Positions 1 through 45,567 of a stretch of DNA of 64,000 nucleotides are shown here, in pieces. Origin of the DNA: Schmidtea polychroa (taxonomy: Eukaryota); the NCBI GenBank assembly GCA_044892525.1, contig CM097886.1, forward strand, positions 2,914,001-2,978,000, read 5' to 3'. Each line of letters starts with the position of its first letter. Position 1 is the first letter of the stretch. The notes under the pieces are model-generated. The model did not search any database and was not told where the DNA came from. It saw nothing but the letters and a program-made list of their open reading frames with translations. The position numbers and the translations under genes were made by a program.

Positions 1-2703
1 ATTTATATTCAAAGATTTATTTTTAAAACGACAATGTTTCAATCAGTTCAATATTTGAATGTGTTCAATTATTTTAGGGCCTTCAACTGTAAATTTATTT
101 TTCACTGGTCCAATCTTTACGGTTATTTTCTTAGGTGTACGTTCCACTAAACCTTTTTTTCTAAACTTTGAAATTATTTGATTAGTTCTCTTTTCGACTG
201 CTTTGGTGAGAAAATCATCTGGAAAAAACATTGGATATTTGGATAATTCATTTTCAGTTGTTGCATTAATAGGCCATTTCCACAGCTCAAAAAAAGGACA
301 CAAATTCATTTTGGATATATTAGAAGTAATCGTAATCCAAAGTTGAATTTTGTCATTGTCAGAAACCTTTTTTTTTCTTATTTCATAAAACTGTCGGAAT
401 GCTTGAGCAAATAACTCCCATCCAAAATGATGCCTTAGTTGTGCAAATATAGATAATGCTATAAAATGGTTATCTCTCCAGTTGGCATCAAATGTTCCAT
501 TAATCAAATAATCTTTTACGTCGTTAATTGTTAACCGTTCTTGAAACCAACCAGTAGTTGGATCCCAAGAACTTTGGTTAGTTATGTATTCAGTAGCTAT
601 TATAGAAAATATGTTGTTTGTTGTTTCTCCCGTTCCCTTGAAAGTAAATATTCCATATTGTAGGTTATGTCCCATCTCATGCATCAAACCCCATTGACCT
701 GTTTTAATATTTTTTATTGTAAAAAAAAATTCACTTCTTTTAGGATTTGCAACCCACCAAATCTGTGTACCGATAGGATATCCTGAATGCATATATCCAG
801 CTCCAATTTGTATATCAGTTGTCACTAATTCTCTGTAATTATCAGGAAATTTTCTTCCACCCAAATGAAATTCTTCTTTAAACATTGAATCGTACAGCTT
901 TAAAATCGCCTCCGGATCGGCTACATTTCGAATGGCACTTGATGCTACTAAAAATACAGTTGTGTCACCGGCTAGGATTGCCCAAGGAGACTCCAATTTT
1001 TGTTTTCGAATCCATTCCTTTGAATCCTCTCGATTTCTTCTATCAAAGTACGGTATTTGCATTACATTTTTAAATATTATTTCGACTTTATCATTATTTT
1101 CCTTACAACAAATTGCAATCAATCCGCCAAATGGGAAATTAATAGTATGCGTTTTGTATCTTTCAATTTTATACTTCATACGCGTCACGGGCCATTTCGT
1201 AAATTGATATTTATAACCTATATTAATATGATGATGATTTAAATATATCGTGCAAGTCTTTGATATGGATTTAACAATTCTGATTGAGGTATCTAGTCTA
1301 GGATAAAGATAAAGACCAAGATAGACATCTTCGTCATTATAAAGAAGATTGAGCTTCATCTTAACATCTACAAGTGGAGGATTATCTGATTGAAATTTAC
1401 CAGGATAAAGCGCCAATGCTGGAGGTAGCACATCTACTTCGAATGGAGAAACTAAAATATAGCTGAAAAATCTAATGAAACATTTATCAGGTTCTTTATC
1501 AATCGGTTTATCAATACAAGAAGTGAGACTTTTAATGAATGGCCAGTTATCTGAATATAAATCCTGAAAATATTTTCTTATCAAGTCAAAGTTTTTTTTG
1601 CCAAATGCCTTCTTAACTGGAATTTTGTCAGGTATTTCATAAAGCAATGTTGTTACTTCATCCATGATTTTGTTGTCCGTTTTGGCATATTCAAATAATT
1701 GATTAAATGCCATGGTATGTATAGAGTGCTTAGTAACGGTTTTCCAATCATCTTCGGTATGGTATAGTTGTGGCCAAACCCCAGCAGCATGGAGCAGAAC
1801 CTTCAATTCACTATCTTCAATCTTTACTTGATTTTCGTATGACCATGGTTTTATCGCAATCACAATCCTCAATCCGGACTCTATAGCTGTAAGTAAAATA
1901 CCAACTAAATCTGGACCTATTATTTTATGACTATTCCAGATGAAAGGTACAGATAATATAGATTTTAATTTGTTCGCTGAAATTATTTCTCTAAAATATG
2001 ATTTTTCCAACAACTTTGGTTTTTTTACAGGTTTCTCAAAGACATTTTGAAAAAAGTCTTGAAATTGTTTATACTGCGTTTCATCCGCTGCGTTATCGCT
2101 CGAGATAAATGCAATACGGCCTTTTCCGACAGTTGAAATGGTCATGGAAATTCTATTTTTACTATTGATTGCGTAACCGATTGCGTTATCATGCAACAAT
2201 AAAAAGTTACCTGGATATCTATCCAAAGAATATCTCAACTCCTTTTTATTTCTATAATATGCATTCATCTAAATTCATAATTAAATAAATTTTTCCATAA
2301 AATATAAATAATTTATTTAATATTATGCAAATATTTTTTAAATTAATTATAAATTAAAATTTTTAAAATAAATATAATGAATGCAAAAATTCATTTTCCT
2401 ATATCCCTTTGTTTTATACGATTCGTTCTGAAACTAAGAAATAACTTTAATCAACCTTAACATAAAATAAGAGAAGTAAATTCCACGATTCAAAAACGTT
2501 AGTTAATTCAACATAATTTGAAATTTACATTTCTTTAAACATTAAACCGAAACACAACAAAATTAAAAAAATATTTTCTAAATTTCAGTAGGATAGAAAA
2601 CTTAACCTACAAAAACATGACAACTCAAGCACACATCCTACCAACGTGATACGCAGACATTAATTAAAAAATATCCATCAAAGATTTGATTGGATGCACA
2701 CCT
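1..2703. repeat. Duplicated block A (M60 ORF plus about 430 bp upstream); partner at 15946-18651
   Basis: Bases 1-60 match 15946-16005 almost exactly. Similarity ends at ...gattggatgcacacc (2703 / 18651). Confidence 0.92.
43..2268 (-). CDS. TCAF/FAM115-like M60-family zinc metallopeptidase, copy 1 (741 aa, intronless; possibly the terminal exon of the kringle gene upstream)
   Basis: HEMGH zinc motif (WGLMHEMGHNLQ) followed by GETTNNIF (gluzincin third ligand), and DIQIGAGYMHSGYP typical of M60/enhancin-like peptidases. N-terminal TISTVGKGRIAFIS resembles vertebrate TCAF AASSYGRGRLVVVS. ATG directly preceded by TTTAG. Confidence 0.93.
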   Translation of the reverse strand: MNAYYRNKKELRYSLDRYPGNFLLLHDNAIGYAINSKNRISMTISTVGKGRIAFISSDNAADETQYKQFQDFFQNVFEKPVKKPKLLEKSYFREIISANKLKSILSVPFIWNSHKIIGPDLVGILLTAIESGLRIVIAIKPWSYENQVKIEDSELKVLLHAAGVWPQLYHTEDDWKTVTKHSIHTMAFNQLFEYAKTDNKIMDEVTTLLYEIPDKIPVKKAFGKKNFDLIRKYFQDLYSDNWPFIKSLTSCIDKPIDKEPDKCFIRFFSYILVSPFEVDVLPPALALYPGKFQSDNPPLVDVKMKLNLLYNDEDVYLGLYLYPRLDTSIRIVKSISKTCTIYLNHHHINIGYKYQFTKWPVTRMKYKIERYKTHTINFPFGGLIAICCKENNDKVEIIFKNVMQIPYFDRRNREDSKEWIRKQKLESPWAILAGDTTVFLVASSAIRNVADPEAILKLYDSMFKEEFHLGGRKFPDNYRELVTTDIQIGAGYMHSGYPIGTQIWWVANPKRSEFFFTIKNIKTGQWGLMHEMGHNLQYGIFTFKGTGETTNNIFSIIATEYITNQSSWDPTTGWFQERLTINDVKDYLINGTFDANWRDNHFIALSIFAQLRHHFGWELFAQAFRQFYEIRKKKVSDNDKIQLWITITSNISKMNLCPFFELWKWPINATTENELSKYPMFFPDDFLTKAVEKRTNQIISKFRKKGLVERTPKKITVKIGPVKNKFTVEGPKIIEHIQILN

Positions 2704-3549
2704 CAAAGGGGGATAGTCCAATTCATTTCACAACATCTAATATGAACACTATTTCAAATTGTCACTCAATGTAATTATTTTCTAATTATATAATATTAGT
2801 TATATAATATTATCTACTTTCTGTATAATTCACGACGAAATATACCTATGAATAGAACAAAATTATTATTATTAGTCAAAGGCAGGATTAAAATTAGTAA
2901 AAAGATTGGTAAGGATAAAAAATACTATTTCAAATGCCATTGATATCAAAACACATCGTGGATATCAGTTTATTCATACAAACAATCAACCCAGCAAATT
3001 CATGGTCATTCTCCAGAATCCAATTTGTTTAAAAAGTTGCACTCCAAGATTTCACATTTGTGTACAACTCATTCAAATTTTATAGTCAATGTAAGATTTA
3101 TTTCAAAAGGAATGTAGTAAAAATGTGTATTTGTTTGTTTTTGTTATCAGGAAATAAGATAAAACATATATTCTGAATCAAGGTAAGATCCGCATTATCA
3201 TATGTTTTACACCAATGGATTAAATATTGATTATGATTTTAAATCATTTACAATAGCATTCAAAAATATTGTAGATGCCAGACAAATGGGTTGTGATAAG
3301 GTGAAATGTGATATTACTGAAAAAGAATATTTATTGCGATTTAATCTATTTGAACAAACAGTTTGATGAAAGAAGAAATCAAAATATCAGTGTCTTATAG
3401 TAATGAAGTTGAAGAATCATTCATGTTTGGTGACGAATTTTATTTTGATAAACTTGATGCGCTCGTTAAATATATCAAGTTCAATTATTCACACATATTT
3501 AAAATTTTTGTGTGTGTGTATAATTTATATTAAAATAACATAATGTGTG

Positions 3550-3750
3550 CGTATTTGATCCGATGGTAACCTGCTTTTAAAGTTGATTTGATTTAGTTAA
3601 TTTTTTATTTGACCTACATTGATCCAGCAGTGGCCTGTTTTTAAATTCTATTTATTAACATTATAGTGTGTATGTATAAATTTGACCTAATTAATTTTGA
3701 TTTAACCTATATTGATATGGCAGCAACCTGTTTTTAAAGTTGATTTGGCC
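3550..3750. repeat. Degenerate minisatellite (about 3 units)
   Basis: Recurrent ttgacctacattgat...cagc...cctgtttttaaagttgattt units. Confidence 0.5.
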
Positions 3751-4017
3751 GACATAAAACTCTGAAAATTTACGTGACAATACTTTGAAAATGATGGACA
3801 ATCAGCGACTTTCATTCGGCCAACATAATAAGTCTCAAAAATGTCGTGAAAATTCAAAAAATTTAGTTGACTTATATAAAATATTTGTTGACCTACATAA
3901 ACATACTAGGAACATTAGGGGAGGCAATCCTTAATAGAGGGATTGATCAAGCGGTGTCCAATCCATCTATTGTCTGATTTTAAAATGTTATTAAAATATT
4001 TGGAAAATTAATGTGCA

Positions 4018-5483
4018 AAATGCAATGAAAACTTTTGTTTTAAATGTTTTTAAATAGCTTTTTTTCTAAATTATTTTTTTCTATATATATTAAAAAGCTT
4101 GACTATGATTGTTTGTTTTCTAAATAAGAGTGCAGTATAATAATAAAATATACCTTTTTTTGATATTCATTAAACTCTTTATTAGGAGGCTTTTTTGGAT
4201 AGAGTGTTCCCGACTGTTTGATTGTGAAATCTGAACTTTTTAGCAAGGATATCAACATCAAATATTTCAACGGTTCCAAACAAGAATAGGAAATTATGTA
4301 ATTTTCACTTGTTTTTGTCGACTTGGTAATTGAACAAAATTCATATTCATCTAAATCAGTTTGACATTCAGGATTATAAGCTGATGCCCACAATGATGTC
4401 TTTTTTAAAGTTCGAGATTTCAGTGACTCTTAGAAATTAATAATAAAACACAACAGAATGTGATTCTTGTTACCAAGTTTGATGGACAAAGTAACTGTCA
4501 CTGTATGATATATATTATCCAATGTAACTATTGTCATGCTCTTACGAATTCCTTTCAAGTAATCATATGCTCCAAAATATTCCGTCTGACCCATTTCTAA
4601 AAATTAATTATTGTAAATGTGACTGACAAAATTGTTATCACGTTTTTCACAATTAACTATGTGACAGTCTTCTCTTTTATAGTTATCCGAATAATAACAC
4701 CAAGGACTTTTAGACTGATCCGGATTGCGACATTTGTTACCAGCAAGATTTAGATTCCTTTCCGGAAATGAGTTTGCGGTATGTCTTTTGAAGTTTATCC
4801 ATGGCTTACATCTTTTACCAGATTTTGTTTGACTTATGTCGCCAAGATATTCTGTACCCTTTTCAGTATCTTTGCACCAATTTCGATCTAATAATTACAG
4901 AGTTCTCAGATGTAGTAGAATTGAAGTTGTTACCTTTATTGCACTTTTTAATATAACAGGATTCCCATTCCAATGTCATTTCATCGATAATACACCACGG
5001 ACCATTTGGAAAATTCGTTGGATTTCTACAGTAATTGTTACCAATAAGCGAGGTATTGTCAAAATAAAATGTATCATCCATAACTATTTGATTTACATAT
5101 TCACTTTTCCAAAAGATACATCGTTGCCCACTTTTTGCATAATTCTTCATCCCCAAATATTCTCTACCGTGAGTTGTCATTCTACATTTTTCTATTTCTG
5201 AATAATTTTTAAAATGAATTGAAACTTTTCAACTCTATGTTTACTTTTCAAATGATTGTTTATTGTGACTTTTCTTTTGAATTTAAATAGTGTATAAACC
5301 CAATATACTTTTTTTCCAAAAGAGTCCAACAAGCACAGAGTATTTGGGACCCAATGGATAATGGCTAGTAGTGTGAAAGAGATTGGAAAAATTTAGTTAT
5401 GTTAATTAATAAATTTAATTCATTGATGTATGAACCTGGTACAAATCCTTCTGATTGACTGATTAAAAACTTGAAAAAAAGCA
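4018..5483. repeat. Duplicated block B (kringle exons 2-5 with introns and flanks); partner at 20038-21533
   Basis: Near base-for-base identity at offset 16019-16020. Confidence 0.95.
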
Positions 5484-8400
5484 TTAATCACACAAAACAT
5501 TTTTAACAGAATATTAATTTAATTTTGTTTAAATAATTAAGAAATATGATAGAATAAATATTGAAATTTTGTTAAATCATTGTGTCAAATCATAACATTC
5601 GCGTCTACGCGGCAATTCACAACAATCAGAAAATGCTATTTTGTGAGTTTCAATCAAACCATGTCCATTCTATAGAAATAATCCAGCTCTATGGTTCAGC
5701 AGCTAGAATCCAAATTCAAATTGTCTCAAATATCAAATGATTCGACAAAATTTCATCACGTTATGGCTTATCTTCGAGAAGATGTCGTCGTCAATATTCC
5801 AGAGACAGTTAATGAATCTTACCAATGCATCAAAGGAATTATTAAGAGGAATTTTGCCAACCACTGACAAAATGTATTGAGTACGCACTTGGAAAATTTA
5901 ATCTAGACGATTTAAAGCCCACACAACTTCTTCAGAGGATTAGTACGGCGTTCACAGAAGCCCAAATAACAGACCAACGGTTATTGCGACACAACTTTAT
6001 TGAAGCTCTCCCAAAGGATATTAAGCTCATAATAACAAGTTTTCAAGAAAGGTTTACGGAAGAATTAGGTGCAATAGTGAATGGGATGATGGCAAGCTTT
6101 GAAAATGAGACACCATATACGAATGACAATTTTAAAATCCAGGCATTAATGGATGAAATCAAGGAATTAAAAGAAGAAATATTCTATTTAAAGGAAACTC
6201 CCAAGAAATCAAAAAGCTTTTTTTCTATCACATGAAATATGAAAAAAACGCCAGGAAATGTGACAAACTGAAAAATGGATCTCGATGTGCTTTATATATG
6301 CAGGAAAATGGAAAAACGCTTCGAAATTAACCACCGTCGAAGCGTGTATTCAAAAGCGGCGTAGAATAAATCAAATCTTTATTTTTAATAATAAAGACAA
6401 ATTTTTAGTGGATACAGGAGCATCTGTTTCATGTCTTTCACGAAAATATTTCAAGTCAGAAATTCTGTGCTCATCTAGACTTACAGCTGCTAATAGTACT
6501 CCAATAAAATTTTATGGGAATAGGAAGATTGATTTACGAATCGATGACAAAACAATTAGTTGGCTTTTCCATGTATGCGATGTATCACAGCCTATTCTTG
6601 ATGCAGATTTCTAGCTTTAATAGACTACAAGTTGAAAAGAGTTTCAATTAATTCGATAGTTGATAATAATCTGTTGAGTTACTTCAACAAACAAGAATGT
6701 AGTGCCAAGATCACAACACAACATGACATTGTTTAAAATGATATCGTCAGATCATTTTCAGCAAGACGATTATATGGCGACAAATTAAAAGCTGTCAAAG
6801 ATTGGTTTAATAAAATGGTAGACACTGATAAATGTCGATTATCAAACTTGCCAATTTCTTCTCCACTAGTCGTTGTAAATCAAAATGGAAAATAAAGATT
6901 TTGAGGTGATTACAGAAATCTGAATACAGCAACCATCCCTGATAGATATCCAATTCCAAGAATCGACGATATATTGCAGATTGTGAGAAATAAAAAATAC
7001 TTCTGTACTATCGACCTTGAAAAGGCGTATCTACAAATTTGGATGAACGAAAATGACATTCCAAAGACAACAATAACTACTCCTTTTGGTATGTACGAAT
7101 TTCTTTTTATGCCATTTGGATTACGAAATGCCCCATCGACCTATTAAAGAGAACAATTGATGATATACTGCGGAAATTTCCGTTCGTTAGAGCATACTTG
7201 GATGATGTAATTATTGCATCAGACACAGAAGAAGAACATGACAACCATTTAAAAATAATTGCAAAGGAATTAAATAAAGTTGGATTGTTAATGCAAAATT
7301 ATGCAATCTGAAGTAGATTTTTTGGGCCATCACATATCAAGAGCTGAAATGGTGCAATAACTTTCTTTATAATCGCAGCTGTTTTGGTTCTTCCTAATGT
7401 AAATTTTCCCTCGAAACATGCAATCATTAGAGGGAAAAGAAAAGTTGTGCCTTCCAGTATGATATGCAATTGCTGCTTCCTTAGCGCTAATATTTAATTC
7501 TTCCTTTGTTGCCGAAATCTTTTTAAAAAGAAGCCGCTTACTGTCTTAATTGAGGCTCCTACATTTATTGCATTTTTGTGACGAGTAGTTCCAACATATT
7601 GAACAATATCCTATCGACAACCGTGGCTAATTGAGAATGCTGATCAGCAAACTGTACAGAATACTTTGATGTCGTCTTGTGGATATCTTGATGAATCCAA
7701 AGTCTGTGGCATAACTATCGTTCCATGAAGTCCTTCTTTTCTTGCTTGTGCTCATCTGGATTAAAAGATTGATTTGCTGGAGACAATTTTGAACGAAATC
7801 AACAAAGGTATTATTTACAATAATAGTTTTGATGATTTCTTTATCCAATAATGCTTTTAAATCATAAATCCACAAATTTGCAGATAATTGTAAATTTTAA
7901 TTTGACAAAGTAGCAAAATATTGAGGTTATCAAAATGTTGTATAAGGGGTAGGAAATTATGATTCGAGGGAGGGAAATAGAGGAATTTTTTGAAAAATAA
8001 TATAATGAATTTACTGAGTAAAATTTTCATTTTTGCTTCAATTTTATAATTTTTTTTAAAAACTTAAAAAAAATCTTTTGAAATACGAGACAAATGCTGT
8101 ACCTTACGGGACATGGCACAAATTCTCAAAATAGGGGACTGTCACGAGTAAATACGAGCAAATGTTCACGACATCAAATAGTGAATGCTTTCATATGCAA
8201 AATATTGACTGAAAAGAGGAATGTTGGGTGTCGCATAGTTAAAGAAAATTGATCTCTATTAGAGAAATTTTCTAATTTATCATGTAATTTTAATTAGATT
8301 TCTACTGATTAAATAGCATCAAAATACTAAAATATGGTCATTTAAAAGATTATAGAGATTTCATCGGATAGATATTAAGAATTTATCATCTTTCAAGGGG

Positions 8401-9534
8401 ATCTAGTCGGTTAAAAGTGAATTTTATAGTAAAATGAAATTTTAAAGAGTCATTTTCATTATAGATTTAAGTGATTTAATATTTATGATTTAATTATTTT
8501 TAATTATAATTGGTTTTATTGAACTTAAGCGAGTTTCAGTAGATTTTATAAATTATTTAGGGTTAATAAGCAATTCAATTTACTTGATTTTAGATGTTTT
8601 ATAGTGAAATATTTATGATATTTAGATAAAAGGAATTAAGATCAAAGTTAAAGGGCGTTTAAAAATAGTCATTTAAAAGGATTTTAAGGAATCTTATTGG
8701 TTTGATATTAAGAGGGGAATAAATGATCTTTTGCATGTATTTATCGCTAAAATACCAATCTTTAAAAATCAATAGATATTTTAGGGAAGTTTCATACTTT
8801 TTAGATGATTTTAATAGGAACCAGTCATTCGCTTGGATACAGAAAACATGTATTTTCATTTAGAGCAAATTATTTAGAGAACTGGTTCATTCGATGTTAT
8901 CTTTAGTGAGTTTATATCAGTTTCCTTTGAAATTTAATGATAATTATTCAGATATTTCTAGCATTGATTGATGATTTTGATAATTTGTAAATGAATTTAT
9001 ACTGGATTTTCTGAATAATTTTAGCAATAAGTCCATCAGTCGAGTATACATTATTAATTACTTTTGAGACATCATCAAAATTAATTTATTTTAATTATTT
9101 ATTCAATCTAAATAAATTATTTACTAGATTTTGTTAGAAAATTCTTATTAACTAGAATGAAGATCTTGGATAATTCAAATTTAGTGACATATAATAATGT
9201 ATGTAATGAAAAAAGTTTCGACTATAAGATAGTCCTTGTCAATCTCCTTGACAGGATTGACAGGAGATTAACAAGGAATATCTTATAGTCGAAAATATTT
9301 TCATTAAATACATTATTTGCAGCAAAAGGTTTAAATTATCATTTTATTGTTTTAAATAATAAATGCTGCTACCAAGAAATCATCATTTTATATTACTTTA
9401 TAATTATTTTAATTTAAAATTAAGCTAAAATGAAATACGCAAAATTTCTCACCTTCGAAATAATCTGCAAAAATGATAAGTTGCAAAGACAATATTATGG
9501 ACAAGTGGACAATCAGCATGAATATAGGGATCAT
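4154..9534 (-). CDS. Signal peptide + 2 kringle + linker module, copy 1; exons 9534-9453, 5197-4934, 4887-4642, 4596-4474, 4428-4154 (330 aa, open at the 3' donor)
   Basis: Kringle 1: GREYLG...SGQRCIFW...NNYCRNPTNFPNGPWC. Kringle 2: GTEYLGDISQTKSGKRCKPW...NKCRNPDQSKSPWCY. All introns GT-AG and phase-compatible (1,1,1,1); small introns 45-46 nt. Exon 1 MIPIFMLIVHLSIILSLQLIIFADYFE is hydrophobic and is conserved in copy 2. Confidence 0.82.
5640..7345 (+). mobile_element. Decayed Ty3/gypsy LTR retrotransposon fragment (gag-protease-RT), antisense in kringle-1 intron 1
   Basis: Gag-like PFYRNNPALWF...SKFKLSQISNDSTKFHHV; protease FLVDTGASVSCL; RT PDRYPIPRIDD, TTPFGMYEFLFMPFGLRNAP, and YLDD at 7195-7206; many frameshifts and stops. 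Confidence 0.9.
7350..7760 (-). mobile_element. hAT transposase N-terminal fragment
   Basis: KKRRTSWNDSYATDFGFIK (BED-finger start), AKEAAIAYHTGRHNF and KFTLGRTKTAAIIKKVIAP in shifted frames. Confidence 0.7.
9210..9300. mobile_element. Short palindromic MITE-like element; relative at about 14315-14390
   Basis: ttcgactataagatagtccttgtcaatctcc...ggagattaacaaggaatatcttatagtcgaa forms an inverted repeat. Confidence 0.65.
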
Positions 9535-9850
9535 TTGGCCATACTGGCTCTGATTGTTCCTTTTAATATGTGTAGGTCACATTGACAATTTGCATTAATT
9601 TGCATGATTTTATGAGGAAATGTCTCGTATAAAAATAATTTTATGAATATAACAAGTGATCATTAATCATAATCAAGTCATAATCATAAACATTAATCAT
9701 AATCATTAATCATAATCAAGTAAAATATGTTATTTATTCAATCTAAAATTCTAATTATGTTATGAACTCTTTAAAATGTCTCTTGTGAATTAATCTCTAA
9801 CACTTAATATTTTGAATTTTTGTATCAAATTTGGGAATAGAAAATAGAAT
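9391..9850. repeat. Duplicated block C (kringle exon 1 and its upstream region); partner at 25411-25817
   Basis: Near-identical at offset 16020; copy 1 carries an extra taatcataatca expansion. Confidence 0.92.
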
Positions 9851-15987: not shown

Positions 15988-18222
15988 TCAGTTCAATATT
16001 TGAATGTGCTCAATTAGTTTAGGGCCTTCAACTGTAAATTTATTTTTCAATGGTCCAATCTTTACGGTTATTTTCTTAGGTGTACGTTCCACTAAACCTT
16101 TTTTTCTAAACTTTGAAATTATTTGATTAGTTCTCTTTTCGACCGCTTTGGTGAGAAAATCATCTGGAAAAAACATTGGATATTTGGATAATTCATTTTC
16201 AGTTTTTCCATCAATAGGCCATTTCCACAGCTCAAAAAAAGGACACAAATTCATTTTGGATATATTAGAAGTAATCGTAATCCAAAGTTGAATTTTGTCA
16301 TTGTCAGAAACCTGTTTTAATTTCTTTTCCATTACATCAAACTGTCGGAATGTTTGAGCAAATAACTCCCATCCAAAATGATGCCTTAGTTGTGCAAATA
16401 TAGATAATGCTATAAAATGGTTATTTCTCCAGTTGGCATCAAATGTTCCATTAATCAAATAATCTTTTACGTCGTTAATTGTTAACCGTTCTTGAAACCA
16501 ACCAGTAGTTGGATCCCAAGAACTTTGTTTATGCATGGATTCAGTAGCTATTATAGAAAATATGTTGTTTGTTGTTTCTCCCGTTCCCTTGAAAGTAAAT
16601 ATTCCATATTGTAGGTTATGTCCCATCTCATGCATCAAACCCCATGGACCTGTTTTAAGATGTTTTATTGAAAATATAAAGTTATCTTTAGTAGGATTTC
16701 CAAGATGATATACCATTGTACCGATAGGATATCCTGAATGCATATATCCAACTCCAATTTGTATATCAGTTGTCACTAATTCTCTGCGTCTATCAGAAAC
16801 GTTTCTTCCTCTCAAATGAAATTCTTCTTTAAACATTGAATCGTACAGCTTTAAAGGCGTCTCCGGATCGGCTACATTTCGAATGGCACTTGATGCTACT
16901 AAAAATACAGTTGTGTCACTAGCAAGGATTGCCCAAGGAGACTCTAATTTTTGTTTTCGAATCCATTCCTTTGAATCCTCTCGATTTCTTCTATCAAAGT
17001 ACGGTATTTGCATTACATTTTTAAATATTATTTCGACTTTATCATTATTTTCCCTACAAGAAATTGCAATCAATCCGCCAAATGGGAAATTAATAGTATG
17101 CGTTTTGTATCTTTCAATTTTGTACTGCATACGCGTCACGGGCCATTTCGTAATTTCAGATTTATAAGCTATCATAATTTGATGATGATTTAAATATATC
17201 GTGCAAGTCTTTGATATGGATTTAACAATTCTGATTGAGGTATCTAGTCTAGGATAAAGATAAAGACCAAGATAGACATCTTCGTTCCTAAAAGGAAGGT
17301 TGAGGTTCATCTTAATATCTACAAGTGGAGGATTATCTGATTGAAATTTACCAGGATAAAGCGCCAATGCTGGAGGTAGCACATTTACTTCGAATGGAGA
17401 AACTAAAATATAGCTGAAAAATCTAATGAAACATTTATCAGGTTCTTTATCAATCGGTTTATCAATACAAGAAGTGAGACTTTTAATGAATGGCCAGTTA
17501 TCTGAATATAAATCCTGAAAATATGTTTTTATCAAGTCAAAGTTTTTTTTGCTAATTCCTTGCTTAATTGGAATTCTGTCAGGTATTTCATAAAGAAATA
17601 TTGTTACTTCATCCATGATTTTGTTGTCCGTTTTGGCATATTCAAATAATTGATTAAATGCCATAGTATGTATAGAGTGCTTAGTAACGGTTTTCCAATC
17701 ATCATCATGTAAGGATAATTCTGGCCAAACCCCCGCAGCATAAAGCAGAACTTTGATTTCAGAATCTAAAATATTTTGTACATAGGCTTCGTATACCCAT
17801 GGTTTTATCGCTATGACAATCCTCAATCCGGACTCTATATATGTAAGTAAAATACCAACTAAATCTGGACCTATTATTTTATGACTATTCCAGATGAAAG
17901 GTTCAGATAATATAGATTCTGATTTGTTCGCTGAAATTATTTCTTTTAGATATGATTTTACCAAAAACTTTGGTTTTTTTACAGGCTTGTCAAAGACATT
18001 TTGAAAAAAATCTTGGAATTGTTTATACTGCGTTTCATCCGCTGCATCATGGCTCGAGATAAATGCAATACGGCCTTTTCCGACAGTTGAAATGGTCATG
18101 GAAATTTTATTTTTACTATTGATTGCGTAAGCGATTGCGTTATCATGCAACAAGAAAAAGTTACCTGGATTTCTACCCAAAGAAATTTTCAACTCTTTTT
18201 TATTTCTATAATATGCATGCAT
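15988..18222 (-). CDS. TCAF/FAM115-like M60 metallopeptidase, copy 2 (744 aa, intronless)
   Basis: Same HEMGH...GETTNN motifs, colinear with copy 1, ATG preceded by TTTAG. Confidence 0.93.
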   Translation of the reverse strand: MHAYYRNKKELKISLGRNPGNFFLLHDNAIAYAINSKNKISMTISTVGKGRIAFISSHDAADETQYKQFQDFFQNVFDKPVKKPKFLVKSYLKEIISANKSESILSEPFIWNSHKIIGPDLVGILLTYIESGLRIVIAIKPWVYEAYVQNILDSEIKVLLYAAGVWPELSLHDDDWKTVTKHSIHTMAFNQLFEYAKTDNKIMDEVTIFLYEIPDRIPIKQGISKKNFDLIKTYFQDLYSDNWPFIKSLTSCIDKPIDKEPDKCFIRFFSYILVSPFEVNVLPPALALYPGKFQSDNPPLVDIKMNLNLPFRNEDVYLGLYLYPRLDTSIRIVKSISKTCTIYLNHHQIMIAYKSEITKWPVTRMQYKIERYKTHTINFPFGGLIAISCRENNDKVEIIFKNVMQIPYFDRRNREDSKEWIRKQKLESPWAILASDTTVFLVASSAIRNVADPETPLKLYDSMFKEEFHLRGRNVSDRRRELVTTDIQIGVGYMHSGYPIGTMVYHLGNPTKDNFIFSIKHLKTGPWGLMHEMGHNLQYGIFTFKGTGETTNNIFSIIATESMHKQSSWDPTTGWFQERLTINDVKDYLINGTFDANWRNNHFIALSIFAQLRHHFGWELFAQTFRQFDVMEKKLKQVSDNDKIQLWITITSNISKMNLCPFFELWKWPIDGKTENELSKYPMFFPDDFLTKAVEKRTNQIISKFRKKGLVERTPKKITVKIGPLKNKFTVEGPKLIEHIQILN

Positions 18223-18910: not shown

Positions 18911-18969
<59 letters not shown>

Positions 18970-18980: not shown

Positions 18981-18984
18981 CAAA

Positions 18985-20173: not shown

Positions 20174-22579
20174 CTTTTTTTGATATTCATTAAACTCTTT
20201 ATTAGGAGGCTTTTTTGGATAGAGTGTTCCCGACTGTTTGATTGTGAAATCTGAACTTTTTAGCAAGGATATCAACATCAAATATTTCAACGGTTCCAAA
20301 CAAGAATAGGAAATTATGTAATTTTCACTTGTTTTTGTCGACTTGGTAATTGAACAAAATTCATATTCATCTAAATCAGTTTGACATTCAGGATTATAAG
20401 CTGATGCCCACAATGATGTCTTTTTTAAAGTTCGAGATTTCAGTGACTCTTAGAAATTAATAATAAAACACAACAGAATGTGATTCTTGTTACCAAGTTT
20501 GATGGACAAGGTAACTGTCACTGTATGATAGATATTATCCAATGTAACTATTGTCATGCTCTTACGAATTCCTTTCAAGTAATCATATGCTCCAAAATAT
20601 TCCGTCTGACCCATTTCTAAAAATTAATTATTGTAATGTTACTGACAAAATTGTTATCACTTTTTTCACAATTAACTATGTGACAGTCTTCTCTTTTATA
20701 GTTATTCGAATAATAACACCAAGGACTTTTAGACTGATCCGGATTGCGACATTTGTTGCCAGCAAGATTTAGATTCCTTTCCGGAAATGAGTTTGCGGTA
20801 TGTCTTTTGAAGTTTATCCATGGCTTACATCTTTTACCAGATTTTGTTTGACTTATGTCGCCAAGATATTCTGTTCCCTTTTCAGTATCTTTGCACCAAT
20901 TTCGATCTAATAATTACAGAGTTCTCAGATGTAGTAGAATTGAAGTTGTTACCTTTATTGCACTTTTTAATATAACAGGATTCCCATTCCAATGTCATTT
21001 CATCGATAATACACCACGGACCATTTGGAAAATTCGTTGGATTTCTACAGTAATTGTTACCAATAAGCGAGGTATTGTCAAAATAAAATGTATCATCCAT
21101 AACTATTTGATTTACATATTCACTTTTCCAAAAGATACATCGTTGCCCACTTTTTGCATAATTCTTCATCCCCAAATATTCTCTACCGTGAGTTGTCATT
21201 TTACATTTTTCTATTTCTGAATAATTTTTAAAATGAATTGAAACTTTTCAACTATATGTTTACTTTTCAAATGATTGTTTATTGTGACTTTTCTTTTGAA
21301 TTTAAATAGTGTATAAACCCAATATACTTTTTTCCAAAAAAGTACAACAAGCATAGAGTATTTGGAACCCAATAGATAATGGCTAGTAATGAGAAAGAGA
21401 TTGTAACAATTTTGTTATGTTAATTAATAAATTTAATTCATTGATGATAGTTTGATATTAGGGAGATGTATGGACCTGGTACAAATCTTTCTGATTGGCT
21501 GATTAAAAACTTGAATCATTCTTATTATATTTCATTCAGGTGAGGTGGCAATCAGTTTTGTATTGTTTAAAGCAGTGGTAGGGGAGGCGCCAAAACCTTT
21601 AGGTAAAAAATGATTTTCATACTATAATATCTACAAATAAATGAAACTTCATATTGTAACGAAACTGTAAATATTCAGTAAATAAATACTTAATTTTATT
21701 TTTATTAAATTTCTATACATACATTTAATTCGTATATAAAAATTATCCGAAGAGGAAGATTTTAAAATTGGCGCCTTTGCAACGCTCTGTTTCGGTAATG
21801 CACAAAACGCCCTCTAGTTGCACGAAACAATAACCTCAAATTTATACGTCACTCGTCGCAAAAGTGTGAACTGTAGCGAATTGGCTGGATGTGTTATTGT
21901 TATTATCGTGATTTCTTTCTGAAAACAATCGTTAGTATATTTTCATATTTATATTTAATTATTATTTATTTTAAATTATATCAATAAAATATTTTTAGAA
22001 AAATGGATAAATTTTTGAGTGGGTACAAGAGAAAAGTTGTGCATATATTCATGTAAGGTTAAAAAATATTAATAATAATTATAATATTAATAATAATAAT
22101 AATGATAACAAAGCCATTGAAAATGATGCAGATGACGGAGAAATTGAAGACAGACGAAATAATGCAGAAATTGAAAACGATCTTATAGACATAGACGATG
22201 TTTTGATGACAGACTTGGGAGATTATGATTAAAAAACTTTATTTTTTATTTAATTGTTATTATTTTTATTTGTTGTCTCTTAATCACAACTAAATGAAAA
22301 TAATATTTAAACAAATTAACAACTAATAATTGTTATTATGTTTCATAAAGTAATTTTATAAAGAAATTTTTACATTTTGTAAATTTTTAATTTAAAATTT
22401 AGATTAATTTTTTATATTAATTTAAGATTTATTAGTTTAAGATTATTAGTTGTTAATTTGTTTAAATATTATTATTTTCATTTAGTTGTGATCTATACGA
22501 TTCCTAGCGTGAAGAATACTGTTAAACGGTCGAAATTTATAGCAATATTATATTTTAATATGCTTAGTTGACGATTTTC

Positions 22580-22610: not shown

Positions 22611-25554
22611 GTTGTCATTTTAAATATTATTAATATTCACAAAAATTTATTTCATAAAAATTTTGTATATACACACCATATTTCGTGGCCTACTTTAAAT
22701 TCTAAGTGAACTTAGATATTTTCCTGGGTGCTGGAGATGAAATGGTGTGGATTGGACACATATCTACTCTAGGTAAGCAACCACTTTATAATATTGATTT
22801 CTTAAGTCAAATCGAAGGGGTCTGCTTGAATTAATTATTAACCAAATAACTAGTTTCTAATATATTAACAAATAACTAGCTTTGCATTAAGTGGCTTGAC
22901 GTTACTAGTACTACACTAACAGAACTATTGATTTTAAGATTAATATATATTGATTTTTATTAATTTTATTATTAAGATTTAGAGTATTAAAGAAATGTTA
23001 GACAAAATCGAGCCGCAGGCATATACCAAACGTTAGTGTATGCTAGTATGTATGTGACGTTTCCTCTTTTAACTCCTTCACCTAATTTTCAACCAAAAAT
23101 GATACGATTCATAGTGTATAAGTTGTAAAATATTGGGTGCCATGCAGTGGCGGACTGGGCCGCCGGGACACTGGGACATTTCCCGGTGGGCCGGTCGAAT
23201 TAGAGGCCGTGAGGCCGGCGATATGTAAACTATTAAATTATTTCTTCTGATTAAAAAAAATAAATAAATGAAACAATATACAATACACACATACCTCGCT
23301 TTACGGCCTAGATACATTCTACGAAACTTGGCCGCAAAGCTATATTCCTCAGAGGGATTCTCATCATATTCACGCAAGTATTCAGGGAAATAAGCGATTG
23401 AGTGATGTGAGCACCATTATTGAGTTAAGAAAAATGTGTAAAAGTATAAATGACTTAAAATACTTGGATCATATAAAAAATGTCAACTCTTGAGTTTTTT
23501 TAACATGAAACCAAAGAAGAAATAAAATATAGATTGAAAAAATATTAAATCTTTTATTAAAAAGACCATGATTTTGAAAATCTATTGGAAGAACTAACAA
23601 TGCAGAGCAATGAACATACAGTTGGTTATTTTTAATGAAACTAATTAAGGATGTTCAACATTGTTGTTTATGTGGATCATTTTTGGTGTTAACCAAAAGC
23701 AAAGGTGCCGTATTAAATTTGGAATGGCGATGCCAAGTAAAATAATTATATACACGTAACAGCACTAGTTTAAGAGAAAATAGTGTTTTTAGAAACATGC
23801 TTTCTTTTTACGAAAATTTTAAAGATATATATATGGTGGTCACAAAATTTAAACAGCATGAAATATCTAAATTTGTAAAAGTGTCACGACCAACACTGTT
23901 GTATTGATGGTTTCGGCAGTTATCTCCGTTTTCGGATGAAATTGATTGACATTATTAGATAATGACTTTGATAAATCTTTAAGGCCTTAAGGATTACTGA
24001 ATTTGTCTTCAATTTCTTCTGTAACACAATTTGAAATTCCATAATTTGATGAACATTTCAAAGAATCGTGATAAATAGATTTATATTCAGCAGCAGTTAG
24101 GTTTGACAAGATCTTTCCAATGAAACGAAATGAGTTTAAGAATATTTATGTACCATTAATAAAACATCGAGATAATCGACAAGAAATGTAAAAGCTAAAT
24201 TATTTAATGAATTTGAATTAGAAATCCATTTAATTTTAAATAGTTCCCAAAGAAATATATCTTCAATAAAATGGATAACTGGTTGAATATTTGAAAACAT
24301 GGATAAACTGTTTAAAGCTGGTATAGAAGATAATTCCAAGTCGTTGAAATTTTAATGTAATAACTATAAAAAGGTTCAAAAAATAATAATTATCAATTTG
24401 AAAAATCTTTATTATCCAATTTAGCTGTATTCAAAATAACTAACTTAACAAATACTTAATATTCAAACAACATGTTTTTTCTTAAATAAATGTTTTTAAG
24501 AAACAAAAAATAACACAAATGTTTTTTAAACTGTTTTCATTATTACTTAAATAAACTTTTTTTGAAAATCTTAAACGCCTCTAAAATTACAACAAACACT
24601 TCAAAAAATAAGACAATTATTTATCGAAAGAAAAAAAAATTATTTTCAAAAAAATCCTATTCGACTTGGTGATTTTTATGTCATAGTTCAATATTATAAG
24701 ACAATGTTAAATAGCAAAGTAAAAAGCCATCGTGGTCCGAAAGAAAAAACATGTGCTTTCATGAACACTTAAACTATACCAGTTTTGGGTTATATTGAAA
24801 TTATTCTTAATCGGTCAAGGAATATATTATTGTCCATTATCAACCGTGTTGTTAGAACAGGTTCAATAATTCGCACTAATGATTGGGCATCATATTCAAA
24901 GTAAATTCGGTAAATTGTTTTGAACATGCCACAGTTGCACACAAATACCATTTCGTGTTCCAATTATGGGAGTGCATACTCAACACGTTGAAAACCTTAA
25001 CAATAGGTAATGTGGAAAATAAAGAAAATGAAAGGATTTAATTGAAAGAAAATATTTTGCATTTTGAACAAGTTCGAATTTCTGGCATACAATAAAATGC
25101 TTGATTATTGTTAAATATTTTATTCTTCCAATTAATGTAGCGTAAAATTGTTAATGTTTAATATATCATTTTTGACGTTATTTTACATTTTATTTAAGTT
25201 GACTTTTTTATATGATCATATTTTTTCGTTTTTTTAATGATACAAATCATTTAAGATTTTATAACAAAACTTTACTAATAAGCCAGTAAGAATTTTATGT
25301 GAGACATTGGTCATTGAATTATTACATCAAATTATTGTTTCCTTATCCACCATTTGATAGATTATGATGGCAGATATGCTGTGGATAATTTTCTTGGCAA
25401 TATATTTTATTATTACTTTATAATTATTTTAATTTAAAATTAAGCTAAAATGAAATACGCAAGATTTCTCACCTTCGAAATAATCTGCAAAAATGATAAG
25501 TTGCAAAGACAATATTATGGACAAGTGGACAATCAGCATGAATATAGGGATCAT
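20174..25554 (-). CDS. Signal peptide + 2 kringle + linker module, copy 2; exons 25554-25473, 21216-20953, 20906-20661, 20616-20494, 20448-20174
   Basis: Near-identical to copy 1 (about 7 coding substitutions by eye); all splice sites intact. Confidence 0.82.
22505..22544 (+). ncRNA. Degenerate minimal hammerhead motif (CUGAAGA family); relative at 43035-43074
   Basis: tagc-gtgaaga-atactg-ttaaa-cggtc-gaaa-tttata-gca; C3 mutated. Confidence 0.4.
23560..25100 (+). mobile_element. Merlin (IS1016/IS1595-like) transposase remnant, interrupted at about 23930-24660
   Basis: N-terminal CCLCGSFL...WRC...SLRENSVF...VSRPTL..WF; catalytic half GSIIRTNDWASY...HATVAHKYHFV...GVHTQHVENL. Confidence 0.8.
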
Positions 25555-43323: not shown

Positions 43324-45567
43324 TCAATTCAAAAGTTCAATTTCTTCTATAATTTGTTTTCCTTCAATTGCAAATTTATTTTTCAAAGGTCCGATTTTTT
43401 CTGGAATGGTAAAAGGCTTACGGAGAACTAAATCTATTCCTCCAAACTTTGAAATTATTTCATCAACTCTCTTCTCGACCATTTTTGTAAGAAAATCATC
43501 TGGAAGAAACATTGGAAGTTTAGATAATTCTTTTTCAGTTTTCTGACTAATTGGCCATCTCCACAACTCATATAAAGGACACAAATTCATTCCGGATATT
43601 TCAGATGTAACTTTAATCCAAAGTTGAATTTTGTCTTCATCAGAAATGCTGCCAATTTCTTTCAGCAATACATTATACCGACGAAATACTTGAGCATAAA
43701 ACTCCCATCCAAAATTTTTTCGTTGCTGCGCATAAATAGCTAATGCTAAGTAATTATTATTTTTCCATTGTTGAAATGTGCCATTATTTATATGGTTTAC
43801 TAGATCATTAATATAAAGTTTTTCTGGAAGCCATCCATTGGTTGGAGACCAAGAACTGTGATTGGTCATAGATTCAACAGCTACTAACGTAAATATGTTA
43901 TTGGTCACTTCCCCGACTCCACTGAAAGTGAATATAGTTTCTTGTAAATTGTGTCCAAGTTCATGCATCAAACCCCATTCACCATCAATTTTAATATTAT
44001 ACATGTGGAAAAAATAATCTTTTTCATTAGAGGGATTTGTGACCCAGAATATCGGTGTACCGATAGGGTATCCCGCATGCATATATCCTGCTTTTATTTG
44101 TATATCTGTTGACACCATTTCTCTACGACTTGCAGTAATTGTTCTTGCTATCAAATGAAACTCTTCTTTCACCATAACATCGTACAATTCTAAAAACGAA
44201 TTCGGATCGGCAAAATTACGAATAGCATTTGATGATAATACAAATACAAGAGTGTCACTAGCAACAACTGTCCATGGTGAAACTAGTCTTTGCTTGTGGA
44301 TCCAATTTTTTGAATCTTCTTTGTTTCTCCTATCGAATAGCGGTATTTGTACCACATGATTGAAAGTTATTTCAACTTTATCATTATCTTCATCACAGGA
44401 AATAGAAAGCAATCCGCCAAAAGAAAATGAAAATATTTGCAATTTATTTCTTTCAATAGAGAATTGAATGTTTGTTTTAGGCCATTTATAAAATTCTGAT
44501 TTATAGGAAACGTCAAAATGGTGATAATTGATGTATATAAAGCAAAATTGAGACTTTGATTGAGTAATTTGAACGGAAAAGTCCTCCCCAGGAGTAGCAT
44601 AAAGACCAAGCTGAGCAACTTCTTTGTTGTAAATAAGATTCAGTCTCATTTTAATGTCTTTTAGTGGAATGTCATTCGAATAAAATTTTCCAGGATAAAA
44701 TGATAATCCAGGAGCATTCATTTTTTGGCCGAAAGGAGAAACTAAAATACTGTTGAAAACCCTCAAAAGTGTTTTACTTGATTCCTCAGTAAGACCAACT
44801 TCCCAACAAGGGATGAAACTCTTAATATATGGTAAATAATTTGAGTAGAGATCGACAGTGAGATTTTTGATTAAGTTAAATGTTGTTTTACTTAAAACCT
44901 TTTCGATTGAAATTTCGGAAATTATGTTCGTAATAGATTCTGCGGCATTTTGTAGGTTGATAGCATTTAATTTTGCATATTCAAGCCTTTCATACATTGG
45001 CATGGTGTATACGGAGGGTTGAGTAACGGTTCTCCAATTATTGTCAGCATATATAAGTGATGGCCAAACACCAGCTGCTAAAAAAAGAATTTTCAATTCA
45101 CTGTCGAAAATCTTTTTAAGATAGTGATCATATGCCCATGGTTTCACTCCAATAATTACCCTTAATCCAGAATTTACTAAGTGAAGTAAAGTACCAACTA
45201 ATTCTTCCCCCAATTGCTTATGAGCACTCCATATGAAAGGTTCCAATATTGCAGATTTCGAATTATTGTTGGAAATTAGCTCTTTCAAACCTTCTTTTGT
45301 CAAATACTTTGGACTTTCTACTGGCTTTTCATAGACATCATTGAACAAGTCTTTTAATTGTGGAAAGTATGTAGCATCAACTATTCCGTCGGTTGCCAGA
45401 AATGCGATTCTGCCTTTTCCAACTGTTGAAATTGTTATGGGGATTTGATTATCTGAATTAATGGCATACGCAATTGCGTTATTACTCAATAAAAAGAAAT
45501 GTCCAGGGTTTTGGTCCGATGGAATCTTCAATTCATTTTTGTTTTTCTTTTGGAAATACTCATTCAT
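43324..45567 (-). CDS. TCAF/FAM115-like M60 metallopeptidase, copy 3 (747 aa, intronless, diverged paralog)
   Basis: WGLMHELGHNLQ...GEVTNNIF, colinear with copies 1 and 2, ATG preceded by TTTTAG. Confidence 0.93.
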   Translation of the reverse strand: MNEYFQKKNKNELKIPSDQNPGHFFLLSNNAIAYAINSDNQIPITISTVGKGRIAFLATDGIVDATYFPQLKDLFNDVYEKPVESPKYLTKEGLKELISNNNSKSAILEPFIWSAHKQLGEELVGTLLHLVNSGLRVIIGVKPWAYDHYLKKIFDSELKILFLAAGVWPSLIYADNNWRTVTQPSVYTMPMYERLEYAKLNAINLQNAAESITNIISEISIEKVLSKTTFNLIKNLTVDLYSNYLPYIKSFIPCWEVGLTEESSKTLLRVFNSILVSPFGQKMNAPGLSFYPGKFYSNDIPLKDIKMRLNLIYNKEVAQLGLYATPGEDFSVQITQSKSQFCFIYINYHHFDVSYKSEFYKWPKTNIQFSIERNKLQIFSFSFGGLLSISCDEDNDKVEITFNHVVQIPLFDRRNKEDSKNWIHKQRLVSPWTVVASDTLVFVLSSNAIRNFADPNSFLELYDVMVKEEFHLIARTITASRREMVSTDIQIKAGYMHAGYPIGTPIFWVTNPSNEKDYFFHMYNIKIDGEWGLMHELGHNLQETIFTFSGVGEVTNNIFTLVAVESMTNHSSWSPTNGWLPEKLYINDLVNHINNGTFQQWKNNNYLALAIYAQQRKNFGWEFYAQVFRRYNVLLKEIGSISDEDKIQLWIKVTSEISGMNLCPLYELWRWPISQKTEKELSKLPMFLPDDFLTKMVEKRVDEIISKFGGIDLVLRKPFTIPEKIGPLKNKFAIEGKQIIEEIELLN

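What the first reader, a model, noticed from the sequence alone, without database searches (positions are those of the whole stretch)
43..9534. Candidate novel secreted kringle-kringle-linker-M60 (TCAF-like) protease, present in three copies
Seen: every M60 ORF has a kringle module upstream on the same strand (units 43-9534, 15988-25554, 43324-48650). In all three the last module exon ends on a complete codon at a GT donor (EYQKK|gtatat; KYENK|gtgaaa), and the M60 ATG is directly preceded by an A/T-rich tract ending TTTAG. The module has no conserved stop-bearing exon of its own, and the M60 ORFs have no signal peptide. Splicing gives uninterrupted proteins of 1071, 1074 and 1073 aa. Established: kringles are extracellular binding modules normally paired with serine proteases or receptor kinases; M60 peptidases are mostly glycopeptidases/mucinases; vertebrate TCAFs are intracellular. 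Inference: exon shuffling converted a TCAF into a secreted, targeted protease. I do not know of this architecture, but could not search for it.
Basis: partly seen in the sequence, partly recalled or inferred. Interest (0 to 1): 0.92.

Follow-up and report, generated by a model that had tools for sequence, protein, structure and literature searches.

The report
Secreted kringle-TCAF-like M60 peptidase genes
Three neighbouring genes in this AT-rich animal genome each appear to join a secretion signal and two kringle binding modules to a complete TCAF-like zinc peptidase, a domain combination that sits unremarked in two database predictions; direct RNA proof of the joining splice is still missing.

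Summary
Three minus-strand units each give a six-exon GT-AG model with no internal stop, coding for 1071, 1074 and 1073 aa. The order is hydrophobic leader, kringle, kringle, a 133-aa beta-rich linker, then one 2.2-kb exon holding a whole TCAF-like M60 body with HEMGH/HELGH and the downstream Glu intact.

The join of exon 5 to the M60 exon is supported only indirectly:
- A conserved phase-0 donor meets a conserved AG just before the ATG.
- There is no conserved stop-bearing exon and no nearby poly(A) signal after the donor.
- dS is about 1 and dN/dS 0.12-0.41 in every module.
- Two UniParc predictions from relatives (P0001, P0004) make the same join, with Val or Ile in place of the Met.
- RNA-run word shares show exon 5 transcribed but not the intron behind it.

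No junction reads were obtained, because read laying failed.

The main rival is real in flatworm-like genomes. There, spliced-leader trans-splicing at that AG can yield chimeric gene models or a second, kringle-less isoform.

The peptidase part is a metazoan TCAF homologue, not a bacterial import. The architecture is lineage-restricted and I found no paper on it. I rate it a new variant of a known kind, of moderate interest.

The parts
9453..9534 (-). Unit 1 exon 1: ATG plus hydrophobic leader MIPIFMLIVHLSIILSLQLIIFA; phase-1 donor GAAG|gtgaga
   Evidence: maximum Kyte-Doolittle 2.79 over 10 residues; identical in unit 2
4934..5197 (-). Unit 1 exon 2: kringle 1 (six Cys), phase 1-1
   Evidence: Pfam Kringle 60.6 bits
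4642..4887 (-). Unit 1 exon 3: kringle 2 (six Cys), phase 1-1
   Evidence: Pfam Kringle 57.4 bits
4474..4596 (-). Unit 1 exon 4: first linker exon (41 aa), phase 1-1, no family match
4154..4428 (-). Unit 1 exon 5: second linker exon; ends on a full codon at EYQKK|gtatat (phase-0 donor)
   Evidence: read-through would add only 16 unconserved codons, and there is no AATAAA for 498 nt
43..2268 (-). Unit 1 exon 6: whole TCAF-like body (TCAF_N-like part, M60-like_N, Peptidase_M60 with HEMGH...E); acceptor gaatttag|ATG; AATAAA 22 nt after the stop
25473..25554 (-). Unit 2 exon 1 (leader)
20953..21216 (-). Unit 2 exon 2: kringle 1
20661..20906 (-). Unit 2 exon 3: kringle 2
20494..20616 (-). Unit 2 exon 4: linker
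20174..20448 (-). Unit 2 exon 5: linker, phase-0 donor KK|gtatat
15988..18222 (-). Unit 2 exon 6: TCAF-like M60 body (744 aa, HEMGH)
48584..48650 (-). Unit 3 exon 1: ATG plus leader MIYTCFLLALPLLSRLASC; TATA-like ggtatataag about 65 nt upstream
48055..48318 (-). Unit 3 exon 2: kringle 1
   Evidence: Pfam 73.6 bits
47760..48005 (-). Unit 3 exon 3: kringle 2
   Evidence: Pfam 59 bits
47438..47560 (-). Unit 3 exon 4: linker
47101..47378 (-). Unit 3 exon 5: linker, phase-0 donor KYENK|gtgaaa; transcribed in RNA runs X1-X4 with no sign of read-through
43324..45567 (-). Unit 3 exon 6: TCAF-like M60 body (747 aa, HELGH); acceptor ttattttag|ATG

Best explanation
Each of the three tandem units is one six-exon gene.

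Shown from the sequence:
- Exon 1 encodes a hydrophobic leader.
- Exons 2 and 3 each encode one canonical six-cysteine kringle, in symmetric phase-1 exons separated by 44-49-nt introns.
- Exons 4 and 5 encode a 133-aa family-specific beta-rich module.
- Exon 5 ends on a full codon at a GT donor.
- A single 2.2-kb exon starts right after an AG. It carries a complete TCAF-type body (N-terminal alpha/beta part, M60-like_N beta-sandwich, M60 catalytic domain) with the zinc motif HEXXH plus the downstream Glu.

Inferred:
- The exon-5 donor is spliced to that AG, so the ORF's ATG becomes an internal Met.
- The leader sends the protein into the secretory pathway, where the kringles form their disulfides.
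- The kringle and linker part acts as a binding or targeting arm.
- The TCAF-like gluzincin cleaves extracellular, probably O-glycosylated or mucin-like, proteins.

Inferred origin: an intronless TCAF-like gene, whose old start codon is still visible, was captured as the last exon of a kringle-exon array. This happened before the paralogues represented by P0004 and units 1-3 diverged, and the gene then duplicated in tandem.
For: Gene structure and selection:
- The models are uninterrupted, with all borders and phases kept between paralogues at dS about 1.
- Every module is under purifying selection with equal dS (dN/dS 0.12-0.41), so the kringle part and the M60 part duplicated together and both are maintained.
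- DNA similarity between units 1 and 3 stops at the proposed donor and acceptor.

No independent 3' end for the kringle part:
- Intron 5 has no conserved exon.
- Read-through tails are 16 and 38 unconserved codons, with no nearby poly(A) signal. The M60 stop, by contrast, is followed by AATAAA at 22-36 nt.

Relatives:
- P0001 (77-88% identical to unit 3) and P0004 (42%) are database proteins that join kringles and linker to the TCAF body at the same place. They have V or I where the window has M.
- In P0001 the next Met lies about 190 residues downstream.
- A genomic contig of a 36% relative keeps ttttag|ATG.

RNA runs:
- The same four RNA runs hold words of unit 3. X1 holds 0.44 of 46800-47379, where exon 5 alone predicts 0.451. 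A read-through of 100 nt or more has P=0.002.
- Sibling runs hold neither part.

Peptidase body:
- AF2 model pLDDT 91.8.
- TM 0.67-0.74 to TCAF1/2/3 residues about 222-918.
- Matches IMPa, BT4244, ZmpB and AM0627.
- All family-invariant residues are present.
- The body is cysteine-poor (4-6 Cys against 7-20 in the other TCAF homologues counted), with two clade-specific Cys. This fits an extracellular life.
Against:
- No transcript-derived protein fragment spanning the junction is in the protein collection.
- P0001 and P0004 are probably automatic gene predictions and could be chimeric.
- Intron 5 (1.5-1.9 kb) is far longer than the 44-59-nt introns 2 and 4.
- The ATG is retained at the exon start in units 1-3 and in the 36% relative, as if it were still used as a start.
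- Scan notes report spliced-leader trans-splicing with an AG just before ATGs elsewhere in this genome.
- Flatworm leaders end in AUG and share acceptors with cis-splicing (PMC12582326).
- The word-share test does not show which words are held.
- Signal-peptide cleavage, catalysis and substrate are untested. No proteolytic activity is known to me for any TCAF.
Confidence: 0.68

Rival explanations
1. Dual use of one acceptor. The AG before the ATG receives the kringle/linker exons by cis-splicing, giving the secreted 1071-1074-aa protein. It also receives a spliced leader by trans-splicing, giving a kringle-less, leaderless, presumably cytosolic TCAF-like protein. That second protein would start at the retained ATG, or at the leader's own AUG where the codon is Val or Ile.
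For: - The ATG is kept at the first codon in units 1-3 and in L001.
- V and I in P0001 and P0004 would be tolerated if the leader supplies AUG (PMC12582326).
- Coexistence of cis- and trans-splicing at the same acceptor is common in flatworms.
- Scan notes describe leader use in this genome.
Against: - No leader sequence or leader-bearing read was examined here.
- The cysteine-poor body argues that the extracellular form dominates selection.
- A Met as the first residue of an internal exon can persist by chance or by descent.
Confidence: 0.17
2. Two separate genes, in an operon or simply adjacent: a small secreted kringle-kringle-linker protein and an independent TCAF-like protein. The one-gene models, including P0001 and P0004, would then be chimeras of the kind common in flatworm annotations.
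For: - Chimeric operon models with spacers of up to several kb are documented (PMC12582326).
- The two halves resemble unrelated gene families.
- The M60 ORF is complete, with its own ATG and poly(A) signal.
- Most TCAF homologues stand alone.
Against: - The kringle part has no conserved stop, terminal exon or poly(A) signal. It ends exactly at a conserved GT.
- RNA word shares fit exon 5 ending at the donor.
- The spacer of 1533-1951 nt is well above usual operon spacers.
- Adjacency, orientation and phase are kept in paralogues down to 42% identity.
- P0001 has no Met for about 190 residues after the junction.
Confidence: 0.12
3. Decaying or non-functional duplicates: the open frames are leftovers.
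For: - Units 1 and 2 show dN/dS of about 1 overall and 1.8 in the catalytic half.
- Transposon insertions lie in the introns.
Against: - Three intact reading frames of about 3.2 kb.
- dN/dS of 0.3 between old paralogues.
- An intact zinc motif.
- Transcription in RNA runs.
Confidence: 0.03

Closest known systems
Vertebrate TCAF1/TCAF2/TCAF3 (FAM115; TRPM8 channel-associated factors)
   Same: The same three-part body and fold: TM 0.67-0.74 over about 700 residues. They share the WG-x-F/M-HE-x-GHN...GE-V/T-T motif.
   Different: - About 19% identity.
- Vertebrate proteins carry an extra N-terminal part of about 220 aa, which is not aligned here.
- They have no leader or kringles.
- They are described as partners that regulate TRPM8 trafficking and gating (PMC11300232).
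- Here the body is cysteine-poor and preceded by secretory modules.
Invertebrate TCAF homologues (Lottia XP_009065661, Lingula XP_013390849, Limulus XP_022249607; 700-741 aa)
   Same: They are the best hits outside the family, at about 29-32% identity. Their length equals that of the window's single exon. They fall in the same half of the tree, apart from the half that holds the bacterial-labelled and bacteria-like sequences.
   Different: They have no kringles and mostly no hydrophobic N-terminus. The window clade sits on a long stem of 1.58 substitutions per site.
Secreted bacterial M60 O-glycopeptidases with targeting modules (IMPa, BT4244, ZmpB/ZmpC, AM0627)
   Same: They share the catalytic fold and zinc motif (Foldseek E 1e-12 to 1e-21). 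The logic of a catalytic M60 domain plus accessory binding modules on a secreted protein is also the same.
   Different: Identity is 12-18%. By my recollection their accessory modules are carbohydrate-binding domains, not kringles. Glycopeptidase activity is not shown for any TCAF-type protein.
Kringle-serine protease mosaics (plasminogen, HGF, tPA/uPA)
   Same: A leader plus N-terminal kringles precedes a protease domain. By my recollection the vertebrate kringle exons are also phase 1-1, which is the classical exon-shuffling layout. Plasminogens are the best kringle hits.
   Different: The catalytic partner there is trypsin-like (S1), not M60. The kringles here lack the second acidic residue of the plasminogen-type lysine site. 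That judgement comes from my reading of the sequences against memory and was not tested.
Chimeric operon gene models in flatworms (PMC12582326)
   Same: Two unrelated-looking halves are joined at an AG that could be a spliced-leader acceptor.
   Different: Here the upstream half has no terminator of its own, and its donor is conserved.

Membership tests
Peptidase M60 (Pfam PF13402 / MEROPS M60) | Profile match above the curated cut-off | tested here: met
   145.5, 142.8 and 137.5 bits against a cut-off of 25.8
Peptidase M60 (Pfam PF13402 / MEROPS M60) | HEXXH zinc motif plus a downstream Glu ligand | tested here: met
   HEMGH...GTGETT in units 1 and 2, HELGH...GVGEVT in unit 3
Peptidase M60 (Pfam PF13402 / MEROPS M60) | Fold like solved M60 enzymes, with the preceding M60-like_N beta-sandwich | tested here: met
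   pLDDT 91.8; IMPa E 6e-21, BT4244/ZmpB/AM0627 E about 1e-13; M60-like_N 33-38 bits against a cut-off of 23
Peptidase M60 (Pfam PF13402 / MEROPS M60) | Metallopeptidase (O-glycopeptidase) activity | not testable with these tools
   Needs recombinant protein and mucin or glycopeptide assays
TCAF / FAM115 | Homology over the whole body, including the part N-terminal to M60-like_N | tested here: met
   Query 18-702 aligns to Branchiostoma TCAF2-like 332-1014; TM 0.67-0.74 to TCAF1-3; clusters with labelled metazoan TCAF homologues
TCAF / FAM115 | Vertebrate-type extra N-terminal region of about 220 aa | tested here: not met
   Fold alignments start at TCAF residues 213-232; the linker profile finds nothing in TCAF homologues
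TCAF / FAM115 | Leaderless protein that binds TRPM8 | not testable with these tools
   The exon alone has no leader; as spliced, the protein has one; binding is untested
Kringle (PF00051) | Profile match and six cysteines in the canonical pattern | tested here: met
   57-74 bits against a cut-off of 34.3 for all four kringles tested; six Cys each
Kringle (PF00051) | Lysine-binding pocket | not tested
   Only read by eye against memory; no alignment to plasminogen kringles was analysed for pocket residues
Spliced-leader operon / two genes | Upstream gene has its own stop, 3' UTR and poly(A) signal before the downstream acceptor | tested here: not met
   No conserved terminal exon; no AATAAA for 498 nt (unit 1) or 1272 nt (unit 2), while unit 3 has AATAAA at 233 nt and unit 2 ATTAAA at 258 nt; the RNA word share fits an end at the donor
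Spliced-leader operon / two genes | Spliced leader on the downstream mRNA | not testable with these tools

The most novel reading that the evidence does not exclude
One terminal exon serves two compartments. Cis-splicing to the kringle exons yields a secreted, kringle-targeted M60 peptidase. Spliced-leader trans-splicing to the same AG yields a cytosolic TCAF-like protein that starts at the retained ATG or at the leader's AUG. In addition, the recently duplicated copies diversify the loop next to the catalytic helix.
Probability: 0.17. Interest if true: 0.65.

Novelty: new variant of a known kind. Interest (0 to 1): 0.45.

Why it matters
TCAF proteins keep an intact M60 zinc site, yet as far as I know they are known only as partners of the TRPM8 channel. 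A lineage in which the whole TCAF body has been placed behind a secretion leader and kringles, and has lost most of its cysteines, points to an ancestral or regained extracellular peptidase role. It also offers a natural candidate for testing whether TCAF-type M60 domains are active enzymes.

The locus is a clean example of domain shuffling in which a complete intronless gene is captured as a terminal exon. It is also a test case for telling true fusions from chimeric operon models in genomes that trans-splice.

Tried and rejected
The message said to lay beside that place, so I tried once more and met the cap. No junction reads were obtained.
2. A search for transcript-derived protein fragments spanning the junction (P0001:211-400) found nothing.
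3. A search with P0004 was swamped by plasminogens and added no family members.
4. An exact spliced-junction pattern in metagenome contigs gave no match.
5. Bacterial origin of the intronless M60 exon: rejected. The best outside hits are Lottia, Lingula, Limulus and Branchiostoma TCAF homologues. The clade sits in the half of the tree that holds them, apart from the half with the bacterial-labelled and bacteria-like sequences.
6. P0005 as a kringle-less relative: rejected as evidence. Its contig is genomic and ends 153 nt upstream, at the same ttttag|ATG.
7. The linker as the missing vertebrate TCAF N-terminus: no similarity.
8. The linker as a known fold: no Pfam hit and no Atlas lead. The AF2 model is weak (pLDDT 59) and the fold search returned only kringles.
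9. The linker as a decayed third kringle: co-linear motifs, but about 0 bits.
10. Literature searches for kringle with M60 or TCAF, and for planarian TCAF, found nothing on this architecture.
11. Rfam at gathering thresholds found nothing in the window.

Full report
**What is there**

The window is AT-rich, at 22-36% GC, and has no N. Self-comparison shows three minus-strand units. Units 1 and 2 are 90-97% identical over the M60 exon and the kringle block. Unit 3 is 68-73% identical to both. Similarity between units 1 and 3 stops within a few bases of the proposed exon ends (33-2273 and 4137-4610).

The three long ORFs are 43-2268, 15988-18222 and 43324-45567. They match Peptidase_M60 and M60-like_N far above the curated cut-offs. 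Two kringles per unit were found by tblastn and Pfam.

**Gene models**

Reading the minus strand and rebuilding the models in a script gives six exons per unit. All introns are GT-AG, introns 1-4 are phase 1 and intron 5 is phase 0.

- Exon 1 is a hydrophobic leader (maximum Kyte-Doolittle 2.4-2.8). The M60 ORF's own N-terminus is hydrophilic.
- Each kringle is one symmetric phase-1 exon with six cysteines.
- Introns 2-4 are 44-59 nt, except for a 199-nt intron 3 in unit 3.
- Intron 5 is 1885, 1951 and 1533 nt.
- Intron 1 of units 1 and 2 is 4.26 kb. In unit 1 it holds retrotransposon fragments.

**Is the kringle part joined to the M60 exon?**

Direct evidence failed. The case is therefore indirect.

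(a) Selection. Between units 1/2 and unit 3, every module has dS of about 1 and dN/dS of 0.12-0.41. Both halves are maintained and were duplicated together.

(b) No 3' end for the kringle part.
- Read-through of the donor gives 16 or 38 unconserved codons.
- The first AATAAA lies 498 nt (unit 1), 1272 nt (unit 2) or 233 nt (unit 3) downstream. The M60 stop, by contrast, is followed by AATAAA at 22-36 nt.
- tblastx and sensitive blastn find no conserved hidden exon in intron 5.

(c) A conserved acceptor. The AG directly before the ATG is kept in all three units and in a genomic contig of a 36%-identical relative (L001). The two intronless kinase ORFs of this window lack such an AG.

(d) Database proteins from relatives.
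- P0001 (UniParc UPI00060BF818) is 77-88% identical to unit 3. It reads ...FTEYENK|VNEYLQKKNKNELK...
- P0004 (UPI0005FFB7D8) is 42% identical. It reads ...EFEQYQNK|IKLILNKRNNKN... and continues into HEVGH.
- Both join the same modules at the same place, with Val or Ile where the window has Met. P0001 has no further Met for about 190 residues.
- Both look like automatic, partly broken predictions. P0001 skips the catalytic domain and P0004 lacks exon 4. They show conserved adjacency and splice compatibility, not transcripts.

(e) RNA runs.
- Four RNA-type runs of the same organism hold 0.33-0.38 of the sampled words of unit 3.
- For 46800-47379 (exon 5 plus 301 nt of intron 5), X1 holds 0.44. 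Exon 5 alone predicts 0.451.
- A 100-nt read-through predicts 0.63, with P=0.002 for the observed count.
- The unclassified 2024 runs (kind '?'), which I take to be DNA, hold 0.72-0.79.
- Runs that lack the M60 exon also lack exon 5.
- Exon 5 is therefore transcribed and apparently ends at the donor, so it must be spliced onward. The M60 exon is the only conserved acceptor downstream.

**The rival**

Scan notes for this genome report three things: spliced leaders, operon-like arrays with an AG just before each ATG, and giant retroelements. They also place findings more than 158 Mb beyond this window's end, so the chromosome is long. Together with the base composition, this suggests a planarian-like flatworm. 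That is an inference, not a check.

In flatworms the leaders end in AUG. Cis- and trans-splicing often share acceptors. Operon genes are frequently fused into chimeric models, sometimes across several kb (PMC12582326).

Val or Ile at the junction therefore does not exclude a trans-spliced, kringle-less mRNA, and the retained ATG could still serve one. I give 0.68 to the fused secreted protein as the main product, 0.17 to both products from one acceptor, and 0.12 to two genes.

**What the parts are**

Peptidase body:
- The AF2 model of the 741-aa exon is confident (pLDDT 91.8, pTM 0.88).
- It superposes on vertebrate TCAF1/2/3 residues about 222-918 (TM 0.67-0.74).
- It also matches IMPa, BT4244, ZmpB/C and AM0627 and the PDB sequence 4fca.
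- The best sequence hits outside the family are invertebrate TCAF homologues of the same length. Most of these have no hydrophobic N-terminus.

Phylogeny:
- In a 62-sequence tree, units 1-3, P0004 and P0005 form a fully supported clade on a long stem.
- The clade lies in the half of the tree with the labelled metazoan homologues. The other half holds a Planctomycetota-labelled sequence and two bacteria-like ones.
- Among the 150 best M60 relatives, only P0004 carries kringles; P0001, found by the other search, does too.

Cysteines: the family's TCAF body has 4-6 cysteines against 7-20 in the other homologues counted. Two cysteine positions (339 and 388) are unique to the clade.

Linker: it has no family match and a weak model with beta-strands at about residues 188-290.

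**Function**

Secretion, kringle-mediated targeting and cleavage of extracellular, probably glycosylated, proteins are inferred from four things: the leader, the disulfide-dependent kringles, the intact zinc site and the analogy with secreted bacterial M60 enzymes. None of this was tested. I know of no demonstrated protease activity for a TCAF.

**Novelty**

No paper found links kringles with M60 or TCAF. A preprint only notes FAM115C homologues in Dugesia expression data. The architecture already exists as two unannotated UniParc predictions. I class it as a new variant of a known kind, a TCAF-type M60 protein with a secretory kringle arm, restricted to one lineage and of moderate interest.

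Noticed in passing
window 15988-18222 vs 43-2268 (M60-ORF residues about 470-525): Units 1 and 2 are almost identical in the kringle/linker exons (3 aa differences) but differ at 101 residues in the M60 exon. A hot patch lies just before the catalytic helix, with 25.8 non-synonymous against 2.2 synonymous changes in 50 codons. dN/dS is 1.8 in the catalytic half (binomial P=0.04). This could be diversifying selection or patchy gene conversion.
   Followed up: partly
M60 exons of all three units (ORF positions 251, 339, 388, 657 in unit 1): The TCAF body of this clade has only 4-6 cysteines, against 7-20 in the other TCAF homologues counted. Four are conserved, and two of those (339 and 388, in the M60-like_N sandwich) are unique to the clade.
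   Followed up: partly
window 4474-4596 and 4320-4428 (-); 47438-47560 and 47270-47378 (-): The first 76 residues of the linker carry a TEYFG motif and a P-x-C...EYC-x-I motif at the spacing of a kringle's start and end, which suggests a decayed third kringle split by intron 4. Profile scores are about 0 bits, so this is only a lead.
   Followed up: partly
window 5984-7147 (+), inside intron 1 of unit 1: Fragments of an LTR-type retroelement lie antisense to the gene: an aspartyl-protease-like ORF and RVT_1 at 38.7 bits.
   Followed up: partly
window 50552-51604 (+) and 31294-32229 (-): Two intronless Ser/Thr protein kinase ORFs (Pkinase 230 and 220 bits), about 75% identical at the DNA level, lie on opposite strands. 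Neither has an AG before its ATG.
   Followed up: partly
window 27482-28216 (-): An ORF with Brinker/Tc5-type transposase DNA-binding domains, likely a pogo/Tc5-like transposon remnant.
   Followed up: no
window 9850-10170 (-): A 106-aa ORF with a U-box/MIZ-type zinc-finger match lies just upstream of exon 1 of unit 1. It may be a gene fragment or a pseudogene.
   Followed up: no
window about 45694-45920, inside intron 5 of unit 3: A short GC-richer element with terminal inverted repeats (gcaggggttcttaacc ... ggttaagaaccactgc), MITE-like. I saw it by eye; the repeat finder at minimum length 20 did not report it.
   Followed up: no
window 49457-49969 vs 61922-62434: A 513-nt inverted duplicate at 98% identity. 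There are also several 80-98% repeats at 58650-60650.
   Followed up: no
P0001 (UniParc UPI00060BF818): This database protein jumps from the equivalent of window 44443 to 43569. It therefore lacks the whole catalytic domain, probably because of an assembly gap or a prediction artefact in its source genome.
   Followed up: partly
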